DNA from: Vitrella brassicaformis CCMP3155
Lineage: Eukaryota; Protista; Chromerida
NCBI GenBank assembly: GCA_001179505.1
Contig: CDMY01000725.1
Location: forward strand, 1 to 27,084
Reading direction: 5' to 3'
Length of the DNA: 27,084 nucleotides
A program made the position numbers and the translations under genes. Below the pieces are notes generated by a model, which worked only from the letters and a program-made list of their open reading frames with translations, ran no database searches and was not told the DNA's origin. Below, one piece after another: positions 1 to 27,084 of this stretch (positions within the stretch are counted from its first letter, which is position 1; every line of letters starts with the position of its first letter).

Positions 1-490
1 GGCCAGTCGGGAAGAGGGGAGAGGAGTAGGTCAGCACAGGAGCGAGTCCTGGAAGGACGAGGAGGCACATGGACTCAGAGAGAGAGCAAGATCTGGCTGA
101 GGAAAGATGATGCAAGAAGGGCAGCTAGCTGTCGTACGAGAACTCGTGTCGCCTCGCTGAGGACTCACCGGGAGGGTGGCCAGCTGGGCGACGTACTCGT
201 TTTCCACCATCACTCACATGCGCACTCCACCATCACTCTGCGGCTCCAAGGGCGGCTTAGGAAGACGCCCTGCCGAAGGGAATATGGTCGGAAGGACCAA
301 GGATCGTGCCGAAGCAACAGATCTCAAGAGAATGACTCAAGTCATATCGGAAGCGAACGATAACAATCATCACGAAACGCAACGGGCACTAACTCGTTTG
401 GCCAACTTCTCTATCTCCCGTCTTACGCCCCCAGGCCCACGCATGCGTGCACTGCAGCCTTATCTAGCGCTCTTCTTCATCAGCAGCCCT

Positions 491-1325
491 CTATCTTTCC
501 TGGCTGCCTCCCCTGTGCCCATCTACGGCTTGTCGTCCTGCCTGCCTACACACGGCTACCATCCTTCAGCCTGTCATCCATCAGCATCAGCATCAGCTCC
601 ATCGATCCATTCATCCAGGGCTGCATCCTCTCCATCAGCACACGGTCCACGGCATCCAATCCATCCGTCCATCACATCCAGACACATACGTCCACACTTC
701 CAGTCATCTGAGCCGAGCGCCTTCATCAGGGCCACAGACAGGGGCGAAGGGCATCGTGAGCACTTCGCAACACCGCCTGCTTGGCAGTGGGGGCAGTTGC
801 AGCCGCCTGCTTGGCAGTGGGGGCAGTTGCAGTCGCCTGCTTGGCAGTGGGGGCAGTTGCACCCTCCTGCACACACATGGACAGTGGGCCGAGCGTGTGC
901 ATGTGCAGACCACAGACTCTCTCTTTCTCCTGCTGACCGTCACAGCCCCTGCCGCTGCAGTGAGGGCAGTTGCAGCCGCCTGCTTGGCAGTGGGGGCAGT
1001 CGCAGCCGCCTGCTTGGCAGTGGGGGCAGTTGCAGCCGCCTGCTTGGCAGTGAGGGCAGTTGCACCCTGCACCAGACCAAGCGTGTGCATGTAGATCGAT
1101 GAGATCGATGTCATGTGTGGATCGAAGTCTGTCTCTCTACTGACCGTCATGGTGGCCACAATTGCAGCCTTTGGGATTGCAGCTTTGGAGATTGCAGCCT
1201 TGGAGATTACAGCCTTGGAGATTGCAGCCTTGGAGATTGCAGCCCCCGTGATGACACTGGCACCCTTCCTCCTCCCCGGTCACTGCACACACATGGACAG
1301 CTGGCAAGTTTGGTGTGTGCTGATC

Positions 1326-1378
<53 letters not shown>

Positions 1379-2464
1379 TGACCGTTGTGGTGGCAGGAGC
1401 ATCCTTTTTCGCCTCTCTTGCACTGGCATCCTTTCTCGTTGCCGGCCTCGGTCAAGTCAGAGGGCGTCTCTGCACACACATATGGAGATCGATCTCTATC
1501 TCTGTCTCTGTCTCTCCCTCTCTCTCTCACACTGACCGTCGTGGTGGCACTTGCAGCCCCCACTAGACCCCTTCCCGCCCCCTTCCTCATCATCGATGTC
1601 CTCCGGCACATTCAGCTTGGAGTCCTCAATGGCCAGCGGCGCCCCGATTGGCACTATGCTGCTGTCGGAAGGGGTGATGGCGTGCTTCTTAATCAGCCTC
1701 CTCAGCTCCTTTTCGTCCGCTCCCCTTGACCTCGGCAAGCTTCTTGCCGCCTTTGATGAGATGGAATGTCGGCAGCATGTCGGTTGGCCTCTCGTTGAAT
1801 GCCAGGTTGTCCACATCAACCTTGCCGAATGTGACTGCGGGGTACTCGTGGCTGAGGGATTCGAGCTTCGGCGCTATTCGATCGCAGGCAACGCACCAGG
1901 AGGCCATGAAATCGATGACGAGGAGGACTGATGGCGGCGTATCTCTCTTGATGGCCTCCAGAGTAGGTCCATCGGCGATGTGGATGATCTCGTTCTCCTT
2001 GCCGACCTCGGTTAAGCCAGAGGGCGTCACTGCACACACATGGACAGCTGGCAAGTGTGCGTGTGTAGATCGATCTCTATCTCGGTCTCTCTCTCACACT
2101 GACCGTCGTGGTGGTGGTGGTGGTGGTGGCAGCTGCAGCCTTTCTCGCCTGTCTTGCACTGGCACCCTTTCTCCTTGCCGGGCTCGGTCAAGTCAGAGGG
2201 CGTCTCTGCACAGACATGGACAGCTGCAAGTGTGTGCGTGTGTAGATCGATCTATGTCTCTGTCTCTCCCTCTCTCTCGCACTGACCGTCGTGGTGGCAC
2301 TTGCAGCCCCCGCAGCTGCAGCCTTGGCAGGTGCAGCCCCCACCAGACCCTTCCCCGCCCCCTTCCTGCTCGCCGGTCACTGCACACACATGGACAGCTG
2401 GCAAATGTGTGCATGTGCAGACCTTCTCTTTCTCTTGCTGACCGTCATGCTTGAAAAGCACAGT
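491..2464 (-). CDS. Cys/His-rich (metallothionein-like) repeat protein with an embedded thioredoxin domain; 3' exons of a multi-exon gene with a 1-bp frameshift in the Trx exon
   Basis: GT-AG exons traced by hand: 2464-2443, 2379-2287, 2205-2104, 2029-1537, 1469-1383, 1282-1145, 1066-938, 866-690, and probably 537-491. All internal junctions are phase 1. The Trx domain reads IDFMASWCVACDRIAP...FGKVDVD...MLPTFHLIKGGKKLAEVKG/ADEKELRRLIKKH. Flanking exons encode GCTCQGCSCGGCKCHHD, CQC..CSCHHHHHHHD, (GCNLQ)n and (GCNCPHCQAG)n. An extra base at 1722-1725 shifts the frame: the exon is 493 bp, whereas the other internal phase-1 exons are multiples of 3. Confidence 0.8.
760..1066. repeat. 30-bp coding tandem repeat (7 copies over two exons) encoding C[ND]CPHC
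   Basis: Unit gcagttgcagccgcctgcttggcagtgggg is visible on the + strand: 3 copies at ~777-866 and 4 at ~955-1066. Confidence 0.9.
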
Positions 2465-2584
2465 CTTGACGTACCACACACACACACACACACACACAGA
2501 GAGAGATAGAGAGAGAGAGAGAGAGAACGAAGCAGCAGTCCAGACTCCGTACAGAAGGTGTGTGTTTCATTAGTCAGTGCTCAC

Positions 2585-3600
2585 GTCTGTGTCGATGTAG
2601 ACCTTGCCGCCCTGACAGATACGCATATATAGAAAAAGCGACAGAGAGAGAGACACAAGAATGTATCGGAAGTGGTGCGTGAGCATCAGGCGGGAGACGC
2701 TGACCGGCGCGAGGAGCGAGTGAATGTTCTGCCAAAATGGGGTTTTGAGCTTCAAGGCCGGCAGCCACTGGCTGATATTTTTGTCTGTCGATGGCGGGGT
2801 ATCCGCGGTGTCCCAGTAGATGGGAAAAAGGGCACGACAAGAGCACGATGTGATGGAAGTGGTGGAGCGGAAGTCCTAGATTCTTGTGGGCAGAATCGAC
2901 CTGCAAGGAATGCATGCATGAGGGGATAGCAATAGCTGCAGGAGTCTCTCACCTACCTGTGCAGTGTTTTCCATGTCGAGCTGCCAAAAAGGCGGCACAG
3001 GAACGTAGGCGAGGAGAGACCACGCATCAGAATTCTTGTTATCGTTGACGATGCCGTGGTCAGGGATCTCAAACTGGACCATGCCCTCCTTCTTCGAGTA
3101 TCCGCTGAGCTTGCGCGGCACCCCTTCCTTGGATTGCCAATCCATGAGCGTAACGCCCCCCATTTATGTCTTCCACCTGCACAGGTAGGCAACACAAGTC
3201 GTGCACGTGAGCGCACATGACATCCGCAGCAGCCGGCACTGGACAGACCATTCTAGGGGGGGACGCTCTCCGGGAGTGCTGTTCGGCTGGCCTAGGCCAT
3301 GAATCACGAAGTCCGGCCTTCCGAAGATGGGCGAATGACATGCTTGACATCAAAAGCATTGATTGCAAAGTGTGCTTTAAATTTGTGTGCGCTCTTGACT
3401 GCATTTCATGATATACCCAGCAGAGTATTCGGGACGTGCTTCCTCTCAAGTCGAAGGAAGGAGTTGTCGACGTCAGCTTGACCGATGGAGGAATTGTGGC
3501 GCGAGCCCCAAGACCAGCCCAGAGTCACTGGGAGGTAGCTCAGCAGTGTCAGCAGATGGAAATATGCCAACATTGCAATGCCGTGACGGGGCGACATCAT
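2585..3600 (-). CDS. 5' exons of the same gene: hydrophobic leader plus a segment ending in a DxD glycosyltransferase-like (GT32-type) motif
   Basis: Exons 3163-2957, 2875-2657 and 2611-2585 join in frame (phase 0) to exon 2464-2443, giving SRLMLTHHF..GGKVYIDTDTVLFK. ATG 3600 opens a hydrophobic N-terminus (MMSPRHGIAMLAYFHLLTLLSYLPVTLG). Linking it to the rest requires crossing an in-frame TAA at 3166-3164, so the 5' model is uncertain. Confidence 0.45.
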
Positions 3601-3872
3601 GCTGCTTGCCCCGGTGGTCGTTGATTTTGCCGACGACGAGGTGCGCCCGATGTCAGCGGCTTAGAACTTAGTTAGAACTACGGTGTCAAAGAGGAGACGC
3701 TCCCAGCCAGCTTGGGAGAGAGCGGTTTCATACGATGCCCTAGTCCCACTTACGGCCAACACGCGTAGATCGAGACGCCCCCACTCGCATGCACATCTTG
3801 CCGCCTTCCGTGTGTCATATTTGTCGGCCCCCTTCTCGTGCGTGGCTCCCGAATACGTCCTGCCTAGATTAA

Positions 3873-6588
<2,716 letters not shown>

Positions 6589-8739: not shown

Positions 8740-9536
8740 AGCAGTGGGAGGCCGACCGGCCTGCCCTGCAGAGCCTGGGCATCTTCCCCGAGGGCATGCG
8801 GACCCCATATTCGGGCTCGGTATGTGCCGATCAGACAAAGGAAAGCCGTTGCCGTATACAACACCCCCACCCATTGGTCTCGTGTGTGTGCGGGCGTGCC
8901 TGTAGGCGTGGCCGTTGCGATTGCCATCCACAACATCCTCGAGGGCATCGCCGTGAGTGTCCCGATCTTCTACGCCACAGGCAGCAAATGCAAGGCATTC
9001 TGTAAGCAACTTACTTGTGCACACAGACGACAGGGAGACGGAGGAATGCATGCGCGTCTGTGTATGTGTATGTGTATGTGTGTGTGTCCTCTAGGGTGGT
9101 CTGTGCTGTGTGGCGCTGCGGAGCCGGTTGGCGGTTTGTTGGCGTGGGTCGTACTCACAAACCTGATGGTGAGTGACACCCACCACCGCAAACACAATCA
9201 CAAAGCCCCACACGCCCCATCATGTCGCCATTCTCTTCGGCCTCGTGGGCGGCATCATGGTCCACATCTGCAGCAAGAAACTCATCGCGACCGCCCTGCG
9301 ATACGACCCACACGTACGCACACACACACACACATACACTTGCGAATGCAGCGGACACAGCCCCAACTGGGGCGGGGAGACGGGAAGAGACAGACAGGCC
9401 AAGTGCGTGAGAAACTAGCCACACATGTGGGGGTGTGCTTATGTGATTGTGTCAGGACTACCTATCCTCTGACATCGTGTTGGTGGGCATGGCTGTGATG
9501 GCGCTCAGTCTGGTTCTCCTGGCCTTCTATGGCTGA
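8740..9536 (+). pseudogene. ZIP-family (ZupT/GufA-like) zinc/iron transporter, 5'-truncated and frameshifted
   Basis: Exons ~8740-8819, 8906-9001, 9095-9168, ~9206-9313 and 9456-9536 give [49 protein letters not shown]...FGLVGGIMV...TALRYDP...GMAVMALSLVLL*. The TM4 motif reads GIFPEGM (HN missing) and is out of frame with DPIFG. No N-terminal TM1-3 is found upstream. Confidence 0.8.
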
Positions 9537-12539: not shown

Positions 12540-14575
12540 CACACACAGACAGACAGACAGACACACACACAGACACACAGAGACACAGACAGACACACAG
12601 ACAGACACACAGACAGACACACCCACACACAGACACACAGGCCGTGTGGTCGTTCTTCGCTCACTAATGCGCGCAAGCACTGCCCCGCCCCCTTACGTAT
12701 GAAACGCTGCATGCCCCAGAACGCCACCCCACCAGCGCCGACTGCTAGAAAACATCGATGAAACAGCACCGATAGACCTATGCTGAACGCCAAGAAGAAG
12801 TGCACCATGAACGTTGTGGAGAACTGTCTGGTACAAGACGATTCAGACAGACCGGAAAAAACAGCATATCCCCTCAAGATGAGGAGCCAGAAATGAGGGC
12901 TGCCAGCGACGAAGCATGCGCAAAAAAGCCATGGAAGTAGACATCTTTGCTCCGAACATGCAGACACACACGCATGCACCGACAGGCAACGCAACACATG
13001 CAAGAGACCCACCCAAGGATTGCAGCACGCGAACGCTCACAACAGCGTTTGGGAGACCCCCTCACTGAGTCGATCACACAGACACAAGCTCACTCCTGAA
13101 CCGACAGATCGACTGACTCACTCCTCTCTGTGGTGCTGCAAAAATCGGTGAGTGTAACACGTAGCTCCTCAAAAATCGATGATGTAACCTCGCGATGAGG
13201 AGGGAGGTGGCATCAATTGTGGCCAACAATTCAGCCACTCGCTGGATGCCCTCGGGCTAGAAAAACNNNNNNNNNNNNNNNNNNNNNNNNNNNNNNNNNN
13301 NNNNNNNNNNNNNNNNNNNNNNNNNNNNNNNNNNNNNNNNNNNNNNNNNNNNNNNNNNNNNNNNNNNNNNNNNNNNNNNNNNNNNNNNNNNNNNNNNNNN
13401 NNNNNNNNNNNNNNNNNNNNNNNNNNNNNNNNNNNNNNNNNNNNNNNNNNNNNNNNNNNNNNNNNNNNNNNNNNNNNNNNNNNNNNNNNNNNNNNNNNNN
13501 NNNNNNNNNNNNNNNNNNNNNNNNNNNNNNNNNNNNNNNNNNNNNNNNNNNNNNNNNNNNNNNNNNAAACAGACAGACAGACGGGCACAAACGCACTGCA
13601 CGCATACGGCAAGACAGGCAGGCAGGCAAACAGCAAATCGCCACATGCATCGCCAGTAGGTCAACATGCACGCACCGAACAGACATACACATACACTGTA
13701 GCGAGACAGGCATAGCGAGACAATTGCGCCCCTCTGTATGACACACCCTCACAGGCAGGCAGGCAGACACCGCACTGTCACGGCATAGAGGCACACATCT
13801 TCAAGGCACTCGCTTGGTACGTACGGGCGACACGACACACGCATGCAGGAAAAAAACACAGACAGACAGACAGACAGACAGACACACAGACAGACACACA
13901 GACACACGCACAGACACACACACAGACACACCCACACACAGACACACAGGCCGTGTGGTCGTTCTTCGCTCACTAATGCGCGCAAGCACTGCCCCGCCCC
14001 CTTACGTATGAAACGCTGCATGCCCCAGAACGCCACCCCACCAGCGCCGACTGCTAGAAAACATCGATGAAACAGCACCGATAGACCTATGCTGAACGCC
14101 AAGAAGAAGTGCACCATGAACGTTGTGGAGAACTGTCTGGTACAAGACGATTCAGACAGACCGGAAAAAACAGCATATCCCCTCAAGATGAGGAGCCAGA
14201 AATGAGGGCTGCCAGCGACGAAGCATGCGCAAAAAAGCCATGGAAGTAGACATCTTTGCTCCGAACATGCAGACACACACGCATGCACCGACAGGCAACG
14301 CAACACATGCAAGAGACCCACCCAAGGATTGCAGCACGCGAACGCTCACAACAGCGTTTGGGAGACCCCCTCACTGAGTCGATCACACAGACACAAGCTC
14401 ACTCCTGAACCGACAGATCGACTGACTCACTCCTCTCTGTGGTGCTGCAAAAATCGGTGAGTGTAACACGTAGCTCCTCAAAAATCGATGATGTAACCTC
14501 GCGATGAGGAGGGAGGTGGCATCAATTGTGGCCAACAATTCAGCCACTCGCTGGATGCCCTCGGGCTAGAAAAAC
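12215..14575. repeat. ~1.0-1.05 kb direct duplication flanking a 300-N gap (likely unmerged contig or haplotype overlap)
   Basis: 12215-13266 and 13567-14575 are near-identical apart from the (CAGA/CA) microsatellite and a few bases. Copy 1 ends exactly at the gap and copy 2 starts exactly after it. Confidence 0.9.
13267..13566. other. Assembly gap (300 N); others at 16253-16552, 19341-19640 and 21338-21637
   Basis: Runs of N of identical length. Confidence 1.
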
Positions 14576-15626: not shown

Positions 15627-18600
15627 ATGTCTCTATGCGCACCCCTGCGCATGTGGACTTGGAGTGCGTGTATATGATGAATGACTTGGAGTGCGTGTAT
15701 ATGATGAATGTCTCTGTGCGCACACCTGCGGTGGACTTGAAGTGTGTGGATATCATGAATGTCTCCGTGCACACCCCTGCGCATGTGGACTTGGAGTGCG
15801 TGCATATTATGAATGTCTGTGTGCGCTATTATGAATGTCTGTGTGCGCACACCTGCGGGTGGACTTGGAGTGTGTGTATATCATGAATGTCTGTGTGCGC
15901 ACCCCTACGCATGCACGTGTGGACTTGGAGTGCGTCTATATCATGAATGTGTCTGTGCGCACCCCTGCGCATGTGGACTTGGAGTGCGTCCATATCATAA
16001 ATGTCTCTGTGCGCACACCTGCGGGTGGACTTGGAGTGTGTGTATATCATGAATGTCTGTCTGCGCACCTCTGCGCATGCACGTGTGGACTTGGAGTGCG
16101 TGTATATGATGAATGTCTCTGTGCGCACACCTGCGCATGCACGTTTGGAGGGTGTGTATATGGTGGATGTCTCTATGCGCACACCTGTCCATGCACGTTT
16201 GGAGTGTGTGTATATGATGAATGTCTCTGTGCGCACACCTGTGCATGCACGTNNNNNNNNNNNNNNNNNNNNNNNNNNNNNNNNNNNNNNNNNNNNNNNN
16301 NNNNNNNNNNNNNNNNNNNNNNNNNNNNNNNNNNNNNNNNNNNNNNNNNNNNNNNNNNNNNNNNNNNNNNNNNNNNNNNNNNNNNNNNNNNNNNNNNNNN
16401 NNNNNNNNNNNNNNNNNNNNNNNNNNNNNNNNNNNNNNNNNNNNNNNNNNNNNNNNNNNNNNNNNNNNNNNNNNNNNNNNNNNNNNNNNNNNNNNNNNNN
16501 NNNNNNNNNNNNNNNNNNNNNNNNNNNNNNNNNNNNNNNNNNNNNNNNNNNNGTCCACGCGTGCATGAGCAGGTATGTGTATAAGTACATTCATTACACA
16601 TATACCCCCTCCAACTCCAAGCGTGCGTGCGCAGGTATGCACACAGAGACATTCATTACACATCCACCCCCGCCAACTCCACATGTGCGTATCAGATGGA
16701 TATACAGAGGCATTCATTACATACACCTCCTCCAACTCCAGGCGTGAGTGCGCAGGTATGCGCACAACGACATTCATGACATACACCCCCTCCAAGTCCA
16801 CGCGTGCGTCTGCAGGTGTGCGCAAAGAAGAATTTATTACATACACCCCCTCCAACTCCAAGCGTGCATGTGCAGGTGTGCGCACAGTGACATTCATTGT
16901 ATACACCCACTCCAAGTCCAAACGTGCATGCGCACGTGTGCGCACAGAGACATTTATCATATACACCCACTCCAAGTCGACGCGTGCATAATGTCGACGC
17001 GTGCATAATCACATGCACGCGTCGACTTGGAGTGCGTGTATATCATGGACTATGCGCACAGTTGCGCATGCACGGGTCGATGTACAGGTCGACTTGGAGT
17101 GCGTGTATGTCATGAATGTCTCTATGCGAATACCTGCGCAGGAAGGTTTGGACTTGGAATGGGTGTATATCGTGAATGTCTCTGTGCGCACACCTGCGCA
17201 TGCACGCGTCGACTTGAAATGCGTGTATGTCATGAATGTCTCTGCGCGCACACCTGTGCAAGCACGTCTCTGTGCGCATACCTGCGCAAGCACGTTTGGA
17301 CTTGGAGTGCGTGTATATCCTGAGTGTCTCTGTGCGCACACCTGCGCATGCACGCGTCGACTTGGAGTGCGTGTATGTCATGGATGTCTCTATGCGCACA
17401 CCTGCGCATGCACGGGTCGACTTGGAATGCGTGTATATCCTGAATGTCTCTGTGCGCACACCTGCGCATGCACGTGTCGACTTGAAGTGCGTGTATGTCA
17501 TGGATGTCTCGTGTGCACACCTGCGCATGCACGGGTCGATGCATGGGTCGATTTGGAGTGGTGTATGTCATGGATGTCTCTATGTGTACACCTGCGCAGG
17601 AAGGTTTGGACTTGGAGTGCGTGTTTACACTCAATGTCTCTATGCGCGCACCTGCGCATGCACGGGTCGACTTGGAGTGCGTGGTCGACTTGGAGTGCGT
17701 GTATATCCTGAATGTCTCTGTGCGCACACCTGTGCATGCACGTGTCGACTTGGAGTGCGTGTATGTCTGGATGTCTCTGTGCGCACACCTGCGCATGCAC
17801 GGGTCGATGCATGGGTCGATTTTGAGTGGTGTATGTCATAGATGTCTCTATGTGTACACCTGCGCAGGAACGTTTGGACTTGGAGTGCGTGTTTACACTC
17901 AATGTCTCTATGCGCACACCTGCGCATGCACGGGTCGACTTGGAGTGCGTGTATGTCATGGATGTCTCTGTGCGCACACTTGCGCATGCACATTTGGAGT
18001 GAGCATGTATGGTGAACATCTCTGTGCGCACACCTGCGCATGCACGTGTCGCCTTTGAGTGTGTGCACATGATGAATATCTCTGTGCGCACACCTGCGCG
18101 TGCACGTGTCGACTTGGAGTGTCTGCACATAATGAATACTTCTGTGCGCACACCTGCGCATGCACGTTTGGAGTGTGTGTATATGATGAACATCTCTGTG
18201 CGCACACCTGTGCATGCACGTTTGGACTTGGAATGTGTGTATATGGTGAATGTCTCTGTGCGCACATGCACGTTTCCTCTGTGCGCACACCTGCGCATGC
18301 ACGTTTTCTCTGTGCGCACACCTGCGCATGCACGTTTGGAGTGTGTGTATATGGTGAATGTCCCTGTGCGCACACCTGTGCATGCACGTTTGGAGTGTGT
18401 ATATGGTGGATGTCTCTATGCGCACACCTGTGCATGCACGTTTGGAGTGTGTGTGTATGATGAATATCTCTGTGCGCGCAGCTGTCCATGCACGTTTGGA
18501 GTGTGTATATGGTGGATGTCTCTATGCGCACACCTGCGCATGCACGTTTGGAGTGTGTGTATATGATGGATATCCCTGTGCGCACACCTGTGCATGCACG

Positions 18601-19340
18601 TGTCGCCTTGGAGTGTGTGCACATGATGAATGTCTCTGTGCGCACACCTGCGCATGCACGTGTCGACTTGGAGGGTGTGCACATGATGAATATCTCTGTG
18701 CGCACACCTGCGCATGCACATTTGGAGTAAGTATATATGGTGAACATCTCTGTGCGCACACCTGCCCATGCACGTGTCGCCTTTGAGGGTGTGCACATGA
18801 TGAATGTCTCTGTGCGCACACCTGCGCGTGCACGCGTCGACTTGGAGTGTCTGCACATAATGAATAACTCTGTGCGCACACCTGCGCATGCACGCGTCGA
18901 CGTCGACTTGGAGTGTGTGTATATGATGAATATCTCTGTGCGCACACGTGTGCATGCACGTTTGGACTTGGACTGTGTGTATATGGTGAATGTCTCCGTG
19001 CGCAAGGGTGTGTATATGATGAATATCTCTGTGCGCATACCTGCGCATGCACGTTTGGAGTGGGTGCACATGATGATTGTCTCTGTGCGCATACCTGCGC
19101 ATGCACGTTTGGAGTGGGTGCACATGATGAATGTCTCTGTGCGCACACCTGCGCATGCACGCGTCGACGTCGACTTGGAGTGTGCGCATATGATGAACAT
19201 CTCTGTGCGCACACTTGTGCATGCACGTTTGGAGTGGGGGTATATGGTGAAGATCTCTGTGCGCACACCTGCGCATGCACGCGTCGACGTCGACTTCGAG
19301 TGAGTGTATATGATGAATAACTCTTCGCGCACACCTGCGC
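15627..19340. repeat. Satellite array, ~60-bp unit (52/54/60/66-bp variants)
   Basis: Consensus tctgtgcgcacacctgcgcatgcacgtgtcgacttggagtgcgtgtatatgatgaatgtc is repeated dozens of times. Block 16553-16990 is inverted. The array is interrupted by the gap at 16253-16552 and ends at the gap at 19341. Confidence 0.95.
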
Positions 19341-20356
19341 NNNNNNNNNNNNNNNNNNNNNNNNNNNNNNNNNNNNNNNNNNNNNNNNNNNNNNNNNNNN
19401 NNNNNNNNNNNNNNNNNNNNNNNNNNNNNNNNNNNNNNNNNNNNNNNNNNNNNNNNNNNNNNNNNNNNNNNNNNNNNNNNNNNNNNNNNNNNNNNNNNNN
19501 NNNNNNNNNNNNNNNNNNNNNNNNNNNNNNNNNNNNNNNNNNNNNNNNNNNNNNNNNNNNNNNNNNNNNNNNNNNNNNNNNNNNNNNNNNNNNNNNNNNN
19601 NNNNNNNNNNNNNNNNNNNNNNNNNNNNNNNNNNNNNNNNGCGGGCTCAGCAAATCCGAGAAATGGTCCCGGTGCAGTCCTATGGAAGTGTTTGCATTGA
19701 GTAAGGACAACATGTGCGCTGGAGTATTAAGCAAGGGATGATGAATATGGCATATTTCTATGTGTAAATATGTGTGACCATGAATACTACGCCACGAGGC
19801 TATAGGGTCATCCCGGGACCTCGTTCATTCATTCATTACACCTCTTCTCCACTATTCCCCCCGCTCCCCTTTCCACGCCCCTGAAAGAAGGTAGAGTCTT
19901 ATTACACTCTCAAGCATTCATCCCTCTGTGCCATTGGGTTCTGGGCTTGCAGCCTTCGAACTTAGGCCGCGGTGCCATTGCCTTCGAACTTACGCCGCTA
20001 TGCCATTGGGCCCTGGGCCTGCACCCTTCGAACTTAGGCTGACTTTGTGCCTTGCCATCTCCCATCGCTGCACCTCTAGATCTCGAGAAGAAAAATGCAG
20101 CTGTACGTGCTCCCCCATAGTTCGTCCCTCTGCACCAAAAAGGTTGTGGACTTGCCGCCCTGCGAGTTTGGCTGCTTTGAGCTTATGTTTTCGTCTCGCT
20201 TGGGGCCCTTTCTGTATTCGGCAGCGTCTATATCGAGGTCTTCAGTTGAGTCTGTCTCTAATCCTTGGCCATCGCTATTTGGTTCTGCATGCCTGGATGT
20301 GCATTGCGGATATTTCTTCGAAGACTCAGCGCTTCGCAGTTTCCCATCCTCTACCA

Positions 20357-22700
20357 TCTGTGCATGCACGCAAGGACGCGCAAACGGTATATGGGATCAT
20401 TGTGTCTGTGCGCACACCTGCGCATGCACGCGTCGACTTGCAGGGGGTGTATATGATGAATGCCTCTGCACGCATGTTTGCGTATGAAGGCGTGGACTTG
20501 CAGACGGTCTAAATGTCTCTGTGCGCACACCTGCACATGCACGAGTGCCTCGACTAGGAGGGAGTGTCTCTCTTGACAAGGTGTGCGCATGCACGCAAGG
20601 ACGTCCAAACGGAACATGGGATGAATGTCCGCACACAAGCGCCTGCACGCGTGGACTTGAAGGAGGTATCTCTGTCCGCACACCTGCGCATGCACACGTA
20701 CGCGTGGAGTTAGAGGGCGTGTATATGGTGAATGTATCTATGCACACACCTGCACAAAAACGTATGCGTCGAGTTGAAGGGAGTGTGGGAGTTGTTGGTG
20801 ACGTTGTTGAATGGCCTTCACAAGGACCTGAACCGCGTCATCAAGAAGCCCGATGTGGAGGAGCCAGACATCACCCGCAAGAAGCTCAGTGAGGGTAAAC
20901 GGGAAGAGAAACTGGCTGCCGAAGCTGGTCCAGACACCTTGCTATTCTTCCAACTGTGACTCACGAGGATGTAAACTCATCCCCAATCGATGTTTTGCAA
21001 CACTTGCAACGGGTGTTGTGTCTTCGACCATCATTGCAGTCGCTTGTTTGTTATGCAATAAGGTCTCTTCTCGCGCAAACGCAGCAATCACGCCAGCTAC
21101 CTATCTCAGAGCTCTGAGTCGTGTGACACGCACAAACAGATAGTCTGACCGCTTTCGTGTCTTCGTGTCTCCCTTTGGTGGTAGAAGTGCAGCACACCCT
21201 TGAGAGGGAGAGCATGCAAGAGATGGATGCTTGCATGAGGAATGATGTACCTATGTACCTTGTCATCAACGTGCCCTGCCAATGAGAGAAGTCACCTTCG
21301 GGTAGATTCTTCAGCTTGCTGTCGGGATTCACCGGTCNNNNNNNNNNNNNNNNNNNNNNNNNNNNNNNNNNNNNNNNNNNNNNNNNNNNNNNNNNNNNNN
21401 NNNNNNNNNNNNNNNNNNNNNNNNNNNNNNNNNNNNNNNNNNNNNNNNNNNNNNNNNNNNNNNNNNNNNNNNNNNNNNNNNNNNNNNNNNNNNNNNNNNN
21501 NNNNNNNNNNNNNNNNNNNNNNNNNNNNNNNNNNNNNNNNNNNNNNNNNNNNNNNNNNNNNNNNNNNNNNNNNNNNNNNNNNNNNNNNNNNNNNNNNNNN
21601 NNNNNNNNNNNNNNNNNNNNNNNNNNNNNNNNNNNNNTCGCAGTTTCCCATCTTCCACCATCTGAGGGAGGGTTTTCATTGCACACGCCACGCAACTATA
21701 GGCTTGCGCAGGCGTGCGCACAGAGATATTCATTGTACACACCAAGTACAAGCGTCCACAGGCGATAGATAGAAAATACGCTCATCGCACACACCAGCCA
21801 ATTCAAGGGTGTGCAAGTGTGCGGACAAAACCATTCATTATACACACCGGCCAACCACAGGTATGCGCAGGTGAACGCATAAAGATATTCATTTCACACA
21901 TGATGCAACTGCAGGCGCACTCCTCGCACACGCGCGTCGAATTGCAGACGGTATATAAGATAAATACCTCTGTTTGCACACAAGCGAATCCACGCGTACG
22001 CGTGGAGTTGGAGGGCGTGTATATGATGAGAGTTTCCGTGCGCACACCTGCACCTACACGGATGCATCGAGTTGAAGAGAGCGTGTCTGTCCGCACACCT
22101 GTGCATGCACGCAAGACGCGCAAACGGTATATGGGATCATTGTCTCTGTGCGCACACCTGCGCATGCACGCATCGACTTGCAGGGGGCGTATATGATGAA
22201 TGCCTCTGCGCGCATGTTTGCGTATGAAGGCGTGGACTTGCAGACGGTATAAATGTCTCTGTGCGCACACCTGCACATGCACGAGTGCCTCGAGTAGAAG
22301 GGAGTGTCTCTCTTGGCAAGGTGTGCGCATGCACGCAAGGACGTCCAAACGGAACATGGGATGAATGTCTGCACACAAGCGCCTGCACGCGTGGACTTGA
22401 AGGAGGTATCTCTGTCCGCACACCTGCGCATACACACGTACGCGTGGAGTTAGAGGGCGTGTATGTGGTGAATGTATCTATGCACACACCTGCACAAAAA
22501 AGTATCATGAATGTCTCTGTGCGCCCACCTGCGCATGCACGCGTGGACTTGGAGTGCGTGTATATCATGAATGCCCCTGTGCGCACAACTGCATATCATG
22601 AATGTCTCCGTGCGCACCCCTGCGCATGCACGTCTGGACTTGGAGTGCTATATTTTGAATGCCTCTATGCGCACACCTGCGCATGCATGCGTGGACTTGG
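20357..22700. repeat. Diverged satellite units and a ~400-bp direct duplication (20357-20760 vs ~22101-22500)
   Basis: The same gtgcgcacacctgcgcatgcacg core recurs. The block gcacgcaag.acgcgcaaacggtatatgggatcattg...cacacacctgcacaaaaa appears twice. Confidence 0.85.
20783..20930 (+). pseudogene. Fragment of a ubiquitin-specific protease (USP4/15-like peptidase C19) exon
   Basis: ELLVTLLNGLHKDLNRVIKKPDVEE...EEKLAAEA matches the family motif ELLxFLLDGLHEDLNRVKKKPYxE...EEVAxEAW. It is isolated and directly fused to satellite, with no other USP exons visible. Confidence 0.7.
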
Positions 22701-26179: not shown

Positions 26180-26211
26180 CTGGTCACACAAAGGGAGGCA
26201 CAATGTGTGCG

Positions 26212-26620
26212 TTAACCTCTGACTACTAAATAGCATTTTTCAGATGTAACATGATGACTTTCAAATCTATAATCCCTACGAAACTCTAACCATTGTCTAT
26301 ACGATGTTATGATCATACTTTCTTCGTAAAGTGCTTTCTGCAAAAACTTGCCATACAATGAATTCATTAATAGTTTATATAGTGATCTCTTAGCTTTTTC
26401 TCCTTCTCTTACTGCTTGCTGCTTCAACTCATATGATGGTTTTATGTATGATGTAAGAATATTTCTTGTTTTATCCAAGACATGGCATTCTTTCCCTTCA
26501 ACAAAACTAATTGTGTATCCGCAACTTAAAGCATCTTCTATTTGAATACTTGTATAATATCCACTTCCTTTATGCAAATCCCAAACTAATCCATCATCTT
26601 TTCGTGCTAATATGTGATAC
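26212..26620 (-). mobile_element. polB: Fragment of a protein-primed family B DNA polymerase (Polinton/virophage/linear-plasmid type)
   Basis: GYYTSIQIEDALSCGYTISFVEG...YIKPSYELKQQA...KRSLYKLLMNSLYGKFLQK contains PolB motif B (KxxxNSxYGKF) with pPolB-like upstream context. The segment is visibly AT-rich compared with its flanks and has no introns. Confidence 0.85.
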
Positions 26621-27084
26621 GTTGGCGTATCCTCTCCTCTGTGCCTGTCTGGGTGTGTGTGATGTGCGTGATAAGACCGAGGCAGACAGACAAACAGACA
26701 GAAGAGAAGCACCAACGCGCCACCGCCCTCTCTGTACGTGCGGGTGAAGTGTGAGAGAGAGGGGTGACTGGCTCTAGTGGTGGTGAATAGGTGGGTGATG
26801 AGGTGGATGATGTGATGGACCCTCAAGACGAGTAACACGGGGTCAGCGTGTGTGGCTCACGTTGTCTTCTCTCCGAGGGGAGGGGAGGAGGACCCTTGAC
26901 GTGCGTAACACTCCACGTAGTCCACGGCGACGCAACACGACACTCACGGCAACGCAACACCACAAGACGCAACACAGAACAAGCCGAAGGGCGGACGCAC
27001 CACAAGGGGGGATCGCTGATGTGTCCTCTGACGGCTTAGCTAGCAGCGCTGGCTATATTGGCTAACTTGCTCAACCACGACATG

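What the first reader, a model, noticed from the sequence alone, without database searches (positions are those of the whole stretch)
491..3600. Chimeric metallothionein-like/thioredoxin protein built from duplicated Cys/His cassette exons
Seen: a WCVAC thioredoxin domain is sandwiched between at least six short exons encoding CxC...CxCHHD, a His7 run, (GCNLQ)n and (CNCPHC)n. The introns between them are homologous (gtcag... / ...gtgtgcag), so the gene grew by exon-plus-intron duplication. Established: CxC/CxxC and His clusters bind Zn/Cu/Cd in metallothioneins, and thiol redox state governs metal release. Inference: a covalent metal-sponge plus disulfide reductase. I do not recognise this architecture.
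Basis: partly seen in the sequence, partly recalled or inferred. Interest (0 to 1): 0.8.

Follow-up and report, generated by a model that had tools for sequence, protein, structure and literature searches.

The report
Broken thioredoxin gene with Cys/His mini-exons
In the alga Vitrella brassicaformis, a thioredoxin exon was copied together with its introns into a row of cysteine/histidine-rich mini-exons, but the gene is now broken by a frameshift and a retrotransposon insertion, so the proposed metal-sponge/thioredoxin fusion protein cannot be made from this sequence.

Summary
The DNA observation is correct. On the minus strand, six phase-1 mini-exons (21-40% Cys+His) flank a thioredoxin (Trx) exon with a WCVAC site, and all the introns are homologous. 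The mini-exons derive from the two ends of the Trx exon.

The single "sandwich" protein is not encoded.
1. The Trx exon is 493 nt (3n+1). An extra G in the run at 1722-1725 shifts the frame, giving a TAA at 1689-1691. Three DNA-like runs and one RNA-like run show the same sequence. The nearest paralogue (contig C520) reads through in one frame.
2. The deposited protein (CEM31547.1, 294 aa) ends at that stop, so four of the six cassettes lie downstream of it.
3. It interrupts the CNCPHCQAGG array at 772/773, and the contig ends inside it.
4. The N-terminal exons match their gene family in different frames.

A decaying duplicate on contig C749 lacks the Trx exon. No other protein with these cassettes was found among 5.8 billion. 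The locus is transcribed and spliced at a low level.

Best reading: a young, Vitrella-specific modular gene that is now decaying. Moderate interest as a case of gene birth and death, not as a new protein class. An earlier first-reader note in this scan (s1-205578) covers this same stretch.

The parts
1..772 (-). First 772 nt (in gene orientation) of a ~1.2 kb LTR. The contig begins inside it.
   Evidence: At least 20 copies at 82-97% identity with a sharp edge at 772/773. Flanks differ between copies. Termini are TGTTGC...GTAACA; 3 copies are followed by TGGTGCATCT and 5 are preceded by a GGCGGGG tract. Read depth is 10-30 times the rest of the gene.
773..866 (-). Native part of cassette exon c6: three CNCPHCQAG(G/D) units, cut mid-unit by the LTR.
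   Evidence: The splice joint 866|938 is seen in RNA-like run X1.
938..1066 (-). Cassette exon c5: four CNCPHC-type units, 40% Cys+His, phase 1-1.
   Evidence: This repeat DNA occurs only on C725 and C749.
1145..1282 (-). Cassette exon c4: CQCHH, then (GCNLQ) repeats, then CNCGHHD. Unique in the genome.
   Evidence: Pfam Pentapeptide PF00805, E = 9.7e-8, 31.9 bits against a cut-off of 20.2.
1383..1469 (-). Cassette exon c3 (GCQCKRGEKGCSCHHN type).
   Evidence: Its 5' end is homologous to the Trx exon's 5' end.
1537..2029 (-). Thioredoxin exon, 493 nt (3n+1). WCVAC at 1884-1898, extra G in the run 1722-1725, frame-A stop TAA at 1689-1691. Frame B (1538-1720) encodes the last Trx helix, a linker and a CKCHHD tail.
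   Evidence: PF00085, E = 4.7e-15. Exon length. All four runs are identical to the window over 1563-1992 with no gaps. The C520 paralogue reads through in one frame.
2104..2205 (-). Cassette exon c2 (GCQCKTGEKGCSC plus His7-Asp).
   Evidence: Included in deposited protein P0001. The C749 copy is 94% identical.
2287..2379 (-). Cassette exon c1 (Gly/Glu linker plus CTCQGCSCGGCKCHHD).
   Evidence: Homologous to the 3' end of the Trx exon, including the donor and the start of the intron.
2443..2464 (-). 22-nt segment with a cassette-type donor (CATGACG|gtcagc). It is needed for the family frame but is skipped in the deposited model.
   Evidence: No RNA coverage.
2585..2611 (-). 27-nt exon. It reads GGKVYIDTD in the family frame and GRQGLHRHR in the deposited model.
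   Evidence: The preceding LLAP segment that fixes this frame matches the family, and one search shows APGGRVVIN continuing in one frame in C91.
2705..2900 (-). Exon 2, 196 nt. The first half (2829-2906) and the second half (2705-2788) match the N-terminal gene family in different frames.
   Evidence: Joint 2900|2957 in RNA-like run X1. tblastn of four family members. The C749 copy is 192 nt.
2957..3176 (-). Exon 1. The family-frame ORF starts at ATG 3163. TAA at 3164-3166 sits where C749 has TAC. The deposited model starts at ATG 3082.
3417..3600 (-). Upstream exon with a hydrophobic, signal-anchor-like ORF that is conserved in the family. How it joins exon 1 in frame is unresolved.
   Evidence: ORF. 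X1 contig 3417-3620. Matches to C419 and C335.
3891..6588 (+). Divergent neighbour: a high-Mr thioredoxin reductase ending in GCGGGRCG. Its start codon is 291 bp from the ATG at 3600.
   Evidence: Pyr_redox_2 and Pyr_redox_dim. Spliced in X1.

Best explanation
This is a young gene specific to Vitrella brassicaformis. A thioredoxin exon, together with its flanking introns, was duplicated in tandem several times, probably by unequal crossing-over between the microsatellite-rich introns. Internal deletion and internal repeat expansion turned the copies into symmetric phase 1-1 mini-exons that encode Cys/His-rich peptides. That much is shown. As the sequence stands, the gene is broken. A one-base insertion in the Trx exon ends the reading frame before the last Trx helix, which strands four of the six cassettes downstream of the stop. 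An LTR has replaced the native 3' end. The N-terminal exons cannot be read in their family's frames as one ORF. The locus is still transcribed and spliced at a low level. I therefore read it as a recently inactivated, decaying gene (a transcribed pseudogene). At most it makes a truncated 294-aa product. It does not make a Trx domain sandwiched between metal-binding cassettes. By inference only, the intact ancestor would have been a signal-anchored Trx flanked by thiol/imidazole-rich modules, possibly serviced by the thioredoxin reductase transcribed divergently next to it.
For: Exon and intron homology. Frameshift: the Trx exon is 3n+1; frame A stops at 1689-1691 while frame B encodes the missing helix and a cassette-type tail; the C520 paralogue P0070 reads the same stretch in one frame; three DNA-like runs and one RNA-like run match the window with no gaps over 1563-1992. 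The deposited 294-aa model ends at that stop. LTR. No other contig holds the continuation of the repeat array. N-terminal frame discontinuity against four family members, and a TAA where C749 has TAC. The sister copy on C749 lacks the Trx exon and has broken acceptors, a 2-nt deletion, recurrent in-frame TGAs and a disrupted TrxR copy. Exons are no better conserved than introns between the two copies. P0001 is a singleton absent from MMETSP, while P0070 is present there. No protein with E <= 1e-30 to the Trx exon among 1.84 billion representatives, and none with the c1+c2 cassettes among 5.8 billion.
Against: The 206 codons downstream of the frameshift have no stop in the cassette frame, against 6 and 9 in the other frames, and all their splice sites are intact. 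The c5|c6 joint is spliced in RNA. So the break is recent, or the exons are still used in some way. The deposited model is an uninterrupted 294-aa ORF that keeps the CxxC site. The c6/LTR junction rests on the assembly alone, because no listed read contig bridges 772/773. The runs carry three coded organism and study labels, and I assume they are the one cultured strain. The N-terminal exon structure is not fully resolved, even in family members.
Confidence: 0.6

Rival explanations
1. The gene is functional as annotated. It makes the 294-aa protein CEM31547.1: an N-terminal region, two Cys/His cassettes (c1, c2) and a Trx domain with a short non-canonical C-terminus. Exons c3-c6 would be 3' UTR. 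The product would be a small redox protein with an N-terminal metal-binding or His-rich stretch.
For: The ORF from ATG 3082 to TAA 1689 is uninterrupted if the 22-nt segment is skipped. The WCVAC site and the Trx core match PF00085. Transcription and splicing of exon 1 to exon 2 are seen in X1. A TrxR lies head to head.
Against: About 50 residues of the model are out of the frame that the N-terminal family uses. The last Trx helix is replaced by 10 off-frame residues. Four spliced introns would lie downstream of the stop. The protein is a singleton absent from the MMETSP transcriptome proteins. There is no RNA evidence for the 2585-to-2379 join.
Confidence: 0.25
2. One reading: one covalent protein with Trx between at least six Cys/His cassettes is made, either through +1 ribosomal frameshifting near the GGGG run or at the GAT-TAA stop, or because the cultured strain's sequence is unrepresentative.
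For: The downstream frame is clean for 206 codons with intact splice sites. Contig depths in X1 are similar (about 5-7) for exon 0, exon 1, the Trx exon and the c5|c6 joint, which fits one transcript (weak, because depth is one figure per contig).
Against: The extra base is present in both DNA and RNA. No frameshift signal is known for this organism, and I did not test for one. Even if read through, the C-terminus is LTR-derived. No homologue with this architecture exists in the databases searched.
Confidence: 0.07
3. The downstream cassettes are translated on their own from an internal frame-B AUG (about 1816-1814) or via an alternative acceptor inside the Trx exon (gggag|cggacg). The product would be a Cys/His cassette protein without the Trx core.
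For: A frame-B ORF runs from about 1819 into the cassette frame. The alternative acceptor would keep phase 1 (my reading of the sequence).
Against: There are many upstream AUGs. The X1 contig is collinear with the genome over 1563-1992. The candidate acceptor lacks the tgtgtgcag context shared by all the other introns.
Confidence: 0.04

Closest known systems
Thioredoxin-domain proteins (Pfam PF00085); nearest relative is the Vitrella paralogue CEM20087.1 on contig C520
   Same: The Trx core matches PF00085 (E = 4.7e-15) and a CxxC motif is present. It is 59% identical to the C520 paralogue, and the two share the Gly/acidic tail and the donor site at the end of the exon.
   Different: The active site is WCVAC rather than the canonical WCGPC (the canonical motif is from memory). 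The last helix is out of frame. The exon sits inside an array of Cys/His mini-exons. The C520 paralogue has lost its CxxC and, by my reading of its sequence, ends in a hydrophobic tail anchor.
Metallothioneins
   Same: Short modules of 21-40% Cys+His with CxC and CxxC spacing and no aromatic residues.
   Different: No cassette matches any Pfam metallothionein family at E <= 1. The modules are exons of a larger gene, carry HHD or His7 tails, and four of the six are not in the open reading frame. Metal binding is untested.
His/Cys-rich nickel-storage proteins such as Helicobacter Hpn (from memory, not tested)
   Same: A His7 run next to Cys pairs in c2.
   Different: No sequence relationship was tested or is expected. 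The resemblance is compositional only.
Pentapeptide-repeat proteins (Pfam PF00805)
   Same: The (GCNLQ) repeats of c4 score above the Pfam cut-off: 31.9 bits against 20.2.
   Different: There are only about five repeats, which I judge too few for a stable beta-helix. Cys occupies the position that is usually Ala. This is probably a convergent pattern created by repeat expansion.
Genes truncated by LTR-retrotransposon insertion; unitary or duplicated pseudogenes that are still transcribed
   Same: LTR anatomy (TG...CA ends, primer-binding site, purine tract in other copies) abutting a coding repeat in mid-unit. A frameshift in a homopolymer run. A decaying sister copy.
   Different: The downstream exons are still free of stops, so inactivation is recent. 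No RT or integrase domain was found within 1.3-1.7 kb of internal sequence.

Membership tests
Thioredoxin (PF00085) | Profile match to the Trx fold above the curated cut-off | tested here: met
   55.9 bits against a cut-off of 23.5, E = 4.7e-15, residues 34-105 of the frame-A piece.
Thioredoxin (PF00085) | CxxC redox motif at the start of helix 2 | tested here: met
   WCVAC at 1884-1898. This is a variant of the canonical WCGPC.
Thioredoxin (PF00085) | Complete fold, including the C-terminal helix, in one reading frame | tested here: not met
   The profile match stops at position 93 of 103. The helix is encoded in frame B after a 1-nt insertion, whereas the C520 paralogue reads it in frame.
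Metallothionein (Pfam families) | Profile match to any metallothionein family | tested here: not met
   No metallothionein family hit at E <= 1 for any of the six cassettes.
Metallothionein (operational definition) | High Cys content with CxC/CxxC motifs and few or no aromatic residues | tested here: met
   21-40% Cys+His and no Phe, Trp or Tyr in c1-c6.
Metallothionein (operational definition) | Binds metal ions through thiolate clusters | not testable with these tools
   Needs expression and ICP-MS or spectroscopy.
LTR of an LTR retrotransposon (window 1-772) | TG...CA termini with short inverted ends | tested here: met
   TGTTGC...GTAACA in 10 copies.
LTR of an LTR retrotransposon (window 1-772) | Primer-binding site after 5' copies and a purine tract before 3' copies | tested here: met
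   TGGTGCATCT follows L005, L007 and L008. ...GACCGGCGGGGTT precedes L004, L006, L008, L009 and L010.
LTR of an LTR retrotransposon (window 1-772) | Target-site duplication | tested here: inconclusive
   A possible 4-bp AGAA in L003, none clear in L002 or L011. The window copy runs off the contig.
LTR of an LTR retrotransposon (window 1-772) | Internal gag/pol domains | tested here: not met
   No Pfam hit in nine ORFs of the adjoining internal sequence. Only 1.3-1.7 kb was examined, with assembly gaps, so the element may be non-autonomous.
Pentapeptide repeat (PF00805), exon c4 | Profile match above the cut-off | tested here: met
   31.9 bits against 20.2. The repeat number is too low to infer a beta-helix.

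The most novel reading that the evidence does not exclude
The intact form of this gene is still made, either in other Vitrella isolates or in this strain by +1 frameshifting. It would be a signal-anchored thioredoxin embedded between six or more Cys/His-rich cassettes, co-regulated from a shared promoter with a Plasmodium-type thioredoxin reductase. It would act as a redox-gated metal store, an architecture with no counterpart in current databases.
Probability: 0.1. Interest if true: 0.7.

Novelty: new variant of a known kind. Interest (0 to 1): 0.3.

Why it matters
As a protein, it matters little. The sequence cannot encode the proposed fusion, and the deposited 294-aa model is already public as a 'thioredoxin domain-containing protein'.

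As a case study it has some value. It shows, with all intermediates still legible in one genome, how the two ends of an ordinary domain exon plus its introns can be copied into symmetric phase 1-1 mini-exons that become Cys/His-rich repeat modules. It also shows how quickly such a construct is lost again, through a homopolymer frameshift, an LTR insertion and a decaying segmental duplicate.

It is also a caution for annotation. The deposited model keeps an open frame by reading about 50 residues out of the family frame and by skipping a small exon.

Tried and rejected
1. I first counted the 196-nt exon 2 as a disabling frameshift, because C749 has 192 nt. I withdrew that as a firm lesion when the deposited model showed an open path that skips the 22-nt segment. 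What remains is the weaker statement that the two halves of exon 2 match the family in different frames.

2. A hypothetical 64-nt intron inside exon 2 (gtgccc...tatcag) would reconcile the frames. I rejected it for two reasons. The family similarity (TDK..W) extends into it. The X1 RNA contig also runs 6 nt past the would-be donor.

3. The apparent variants at 2750-3090 in runs X2-X4, including a 1-nt deletion at 2756, turned out to be letters of the C749 paralogue laid at 90% likeness. They are not alleles.

4. I could not class the repeat by protein domains. I classed it by its ends instead.

5. I could not resolve the join between the signal-anchor exon and exon 1, even in the C335 family member, so I did not count it as a lesion.

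6. Searches that returned nothing useful:
- The look-up of encoding contigs for P0001
- ESM Atlas for the CNCPHC repeat
- Pfam for the N-terminal family and for the C293 domain
- word-index searches with P0001 regions 1-68 and 117-182, which returned only P0001 itself

7. The Chromera mercury-response paper does not mention metallothioneins.

Exons were searched one by one by reference, and the deposited protein P0001 was used where a longer query was needed.
Full report
**Source.** The window is scaffold C725 (27,084 bp) of a 72,700,666-bp, 1,064-scaffold assembly. That is exactly the size published for Vitrella brassicaformis CCMP3155 (PMC4501334). The deposited protein from this locus is named as from that strain. 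The genome was assembled from Illumina reads with velvet, and genes were called with Augustus.

**Observation.** The gene lies on the minus strand. A scan for the recurrent donor and acceptor strings gives this exon series, in plus-strand coordinates:
- c1: 2379..2287 (93 nt)
- c2: 2205..2104 (102 nt, with His7)
- Trx exon: 2029..1537 (493 nt)
- c3: 1469..1383 (87 nt)
- c4: 1282..1145 (138 nt, GCNLQ repeats)
- c5: 1066..938 (129 nt, CNCPHC-type decapeptide units)
- c6: from 866

All cassette introns are phase 1. The exons end in ...CxC(H)HHD plus G|gtcag and begin after ...tgtgtgcag. The cassettes are 21-40% Cys+His and contain no aromatic residue. The Trx exon matches Pfam Thioredoxin (E = 4.7e-15) and carries WCVAC at 1884-1898. 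The seven introns align to one skeleton: GTCAG, a (GA)n tract, GATCGATCT, an ACACGCACAC-type tract, then GCCAGCTGTCCATGTGTGTGCAG.

**Origin of the cassettes.**
- The 5' ends of c2 and c3, acceptor included, align with the 5' end of the Trx exon for about 40 nt.
- c1 aligns with the 3' end of the Trx exon: the Gly/Glu linker, GGCTGCAAGTGCCACCACGACG, the donor and the first 30 nt of the intron.
- The nearest Trx paralogue, on contig C520, shares that Gly/acidic tail and donor but not the CxCHHD motif.

The mini-exons are therefore internally deleted or re-expanded copies of the Trx exon with its introns. Another gene, on C293, starts with a hydrophobic signal-peptide-like ORF and also carries two such cassettes. 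So the module has spread within the genome.

**Why the sandwich protein is not encoded.**

1. *Frameshift in the Trx exon.*
- Every cassette length is divisible by 3, but the Trx exon is 3n+1.
- Read from its phase-1 acceptor, frame A runs through the Trx core to ...EVKGS and then hits TAA at 1689-1691.
- The last Trx helix (ADEKELRRLIKKH), the linker and the cassette-type tail that ends on the phase-1 donor are in frame B.
- The C520 paralogue (P0070, 59% identical) reads the equivalent ...LKGSDEQKLRRLIEVH... in one frame. Aligned at DNA level, the window has GGGG (1722-1725) where C520 has GGG.
- Contigs from three DNA-like runs and one RNA-like run match the window over 1563-1992 with no mismatch and no gap. 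So the extra base is real and is not corrected in RNA.
- I take run X1 as RNA-derived because it carries GT..AG joints in the neighbouring gene.

2. *The deposited model stops there.* An exhaustive search with the frame-A piece found one protein at E <= 1e-30. This is P0001, 294 aa, whose last 112 residues are the query. It is CEM31547.1 / A0A0G4GMX4, "thioredoxin domain-containing protein", and a singleton cluster. It consists of exon 1 from Met 3082, exon 2, the 27-nt exon, c1, c2 and the Trx exon up to the TAA. Exons c3-c6 lie downstream of its stop.

3. *The C-terminus is an LTR.*
- Window 1-772 has at least 20 copies in the genome at 82-97% identity, all ending sharply at 772/773. Read depth there is 10-30 times that of the rest of the gene.
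- In gene orientation the element starts TGTTGC and ends GTAACA, about 1.2 kb later.
- Three copies are followed by TGGTGCATCT, the complement of a tRNA 3' end. Five are preceded by the same internal sequence ending in a GGCGGGG tract. Other copies have unrelated flanks.
- That is LTR anatomy. No gag or pol domain was found in the short internal stretches available, and target-site duplications were inconclusive.
- The LTR interrupts the CNCPHCQAGG array in mid-unit, and the scaffold ends inside it.
- CNCPHC-type DNA occurs only on C725 and C749, and exon c4 only here. So the native 3' end is not in the assembly.

4. *The N-terminal exons do not share one frame.*
- Exon 1 and exon 2 belong to a small Vitrella family with no Pfam match, found on C91 (two genes), C335, C419 and C130.
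- tblastn of those members onto the window shows four segments in three different frames: the signal-anchor exon (3597-3409), exon 1 (3163-2957), the first half of exon 2 (2906-2829) and the second half (2788-2705).
- An in-frame TAA (3164-3166) sits where C749 has TAC and C91 has Tyr.
- The deposited model keeps an ORF by reading about 50 residues out of the family frame and by skipping a 22-nt segment (2443-2464).
- I do not count this region as a proven lesion, because the family's own exon structure is not resolved. It does add to the picture.

**Sister copy.**
- C749 holds a segmental duplicate that includes the start of the divergent neighbour, the N-terminal exons, c1 and c2 (94% identity). 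It has no Trx exon, no c3 and no c4.
- It continues directly into at least nine CNCPHC-type exons. These show a deleted acceptor, a CAA in place of CAG, a 2-nt deletion and an in-frame TGA that recurs through tandem copies.
- Its TrxR copy is split across frames and has TGAs.
- Between the two copies, exon 1 differs at 11 of 207 nt (pN/pS about 0.6), while the adjoining introns are 98-100% identical. So there is no sign of purifying selection, although the counts are small.
- An X1 loose end at 1059 is exactly a C749-type exon-exon junction, so that array is also transcribed and spliced.

**Expression.** X1 contigs lie on exon 0 (3417-3620), on exon 1 joined to exon 2 (2957|2900), on the Trx exon, and on c5 joined to c6 (938|866). 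Each has a contig depth of about 5-7. No contig covers c1, c2, c3 or c4, partly because the tool skipped the low-complexity introns. So the joins from the Trx exon to its neighbouring cassettes are not shown. P0001 is absent from the MMETSP-derived proteins, while the C520 paralogue is present there.

**What argues for caution.** Downstream of the frameshift, 206 codons have no stop in the cassette frame, against 6 and 9 in the other two frames, and all splice sites are intact. The break is therefore recent, or there is a route I cannot see: +1 frameshifting, an alternative acceptor, or an intact allele elsewhere. The c6/LTR junction is supported only by the assembly. I assume, from the small number of studies, that all the runs come from the one cultured strain.

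**Mechanism.**
- *Shown:* tandem duplication of exon plus intron, derivation of the cassettes from the ends of the Trx exon, the frameshift, the LTR, the decaying duplicate, and low-level spliced transcription.
- *Inferred:* the intact ancestor was a signal-anchored Trx flanked by thiol/imidazole-rich modules. Its redox state could have been set by the thioredoxin reductase transcribed divergently 291 bp away. That neighbour spans 3891-6588, has Pyr_redox_2 and Pyr_redox_dim domains, and ends in GCGGGRCG.
- *Uncertain:* if the protein entered the secretory or plastid route, as the conserved hydrophobic first exon suggests, its cysteines might equally have formed disulfides rather than metal clusters.
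- *Not tested:* metal binding. No cassette matches a Pfam metallothionein family.

**Comparison with known families.** The locus contains a Trx domain that passes the profile test and the CxxC test but fails the test of a complete fold in one frame. The modules are metallothionein-like in composition only. Exon c4 hits the Pentapeptide profile above its cut-off, but with too few repeats to imply a beta-helix. No protein with the cassettes was found among 5.8 billion clustered proteins of 162-515 aa. No close Trx relative was found among 1.84 billion representatives.

**Verdict.** My best reading is a young, lineage-specific modular gene caught in decay (confidence 0.6). Interest is moderate to low.

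Noticed in passing
window 3891-6588 (+): A high-Mr thioredoxin reductase is transcribed divergently from the Trx gene, with 291 bp between the two ATGs. It has a hydrophobic signal-like N-terminus followed by a Gly/Ala/Ser-rich leader, and its C-terminus is GCGGGRCG. From memory, that is the CGGGxC redox centre typical of Plasmodium-type TrxR. A second copy at 82% identity lies on C518, and a broken copy lies on C749.
   Followed up: partly
G000:C749:9990-14300 (L024): A segmental duplicate of the whole head-to-head locus. It has no Trx exon but at least nine tandem CNCPHC-type exons. One multi-exon unit carrying an in-frame TGA has itself been re-duplicated. The array is transcribed and spliced (X1 loose end at window 1059).
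   Followed up: partly
G000:C293:79300-80350 (L018:1040-2080, minus strand): A separate gene with a signal-peptide-like first exon, two GEKGCxCHHN-type cassettes with the same gtcagtg...gtgcag introns, then a ~75-aa exon with no Pfam match. The cassette appears to be a mobile exon module in this genome.
   Followed up: partly
window 1-772; L002-L012, L026, L027: A ~1.2 kb LTR family (TGTTGC...GTAACA, primer-binding site TGGTGCATCT) with at least 20 copies. It is transcribed (X1 depth 60-130) and is often found at scaffold ends or next to N gaps. The adjoining internal ORFs have no Pfam domain, so the element may be non-autonomous. In L002 the sequence directly next to the LTR edge reads, by eye, like a retrotransposon gag protein (not tested against Pfam).
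   Followed up: partly
G000:C91:69800-72600, C335 (several), C419:2100-3200, C130:25200-25900: A Vitrella gene family with no Pfam match. It consists of a signal-anchor exon, an exon with a ...VQFE...FWQLD... motif, and an exon ending ...SFWxNxxSLxAPGG. The N-terminal exons of the window gene are a copy of it.
   Followed up: partly
G000:C520:239606-240100 (L025:3607-4221): A Trx-like paralogue (CEM20087.1, 345 aa) that has lost the CxxC motif and, by my reading of its sequence, ends in a hydrophobic tail anchor. It is present in MMETSP transcriptome proteins.
   Followed up: partly
window 8860-9030 (+): One exon gives a sub-threshold match to the ZIP zinc transporter family (PF02535, E = 0.0017, 18 bits against a cut-off of 35), including an HNxxEG motif. 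This agrees with the earlier scan note of a ZIP gene next to the Trx/TrxR pair.
   Followed up: partly
window 13001-14000, 16001-17000, 19001-20000, 21001-22000: Four 1-kb composition bins at 35-39% GC, set in a 52-59% GC background. An earlier scan note reports a PolB-like fragment at 26180-26644. I did not examine these.
   Followed up: no
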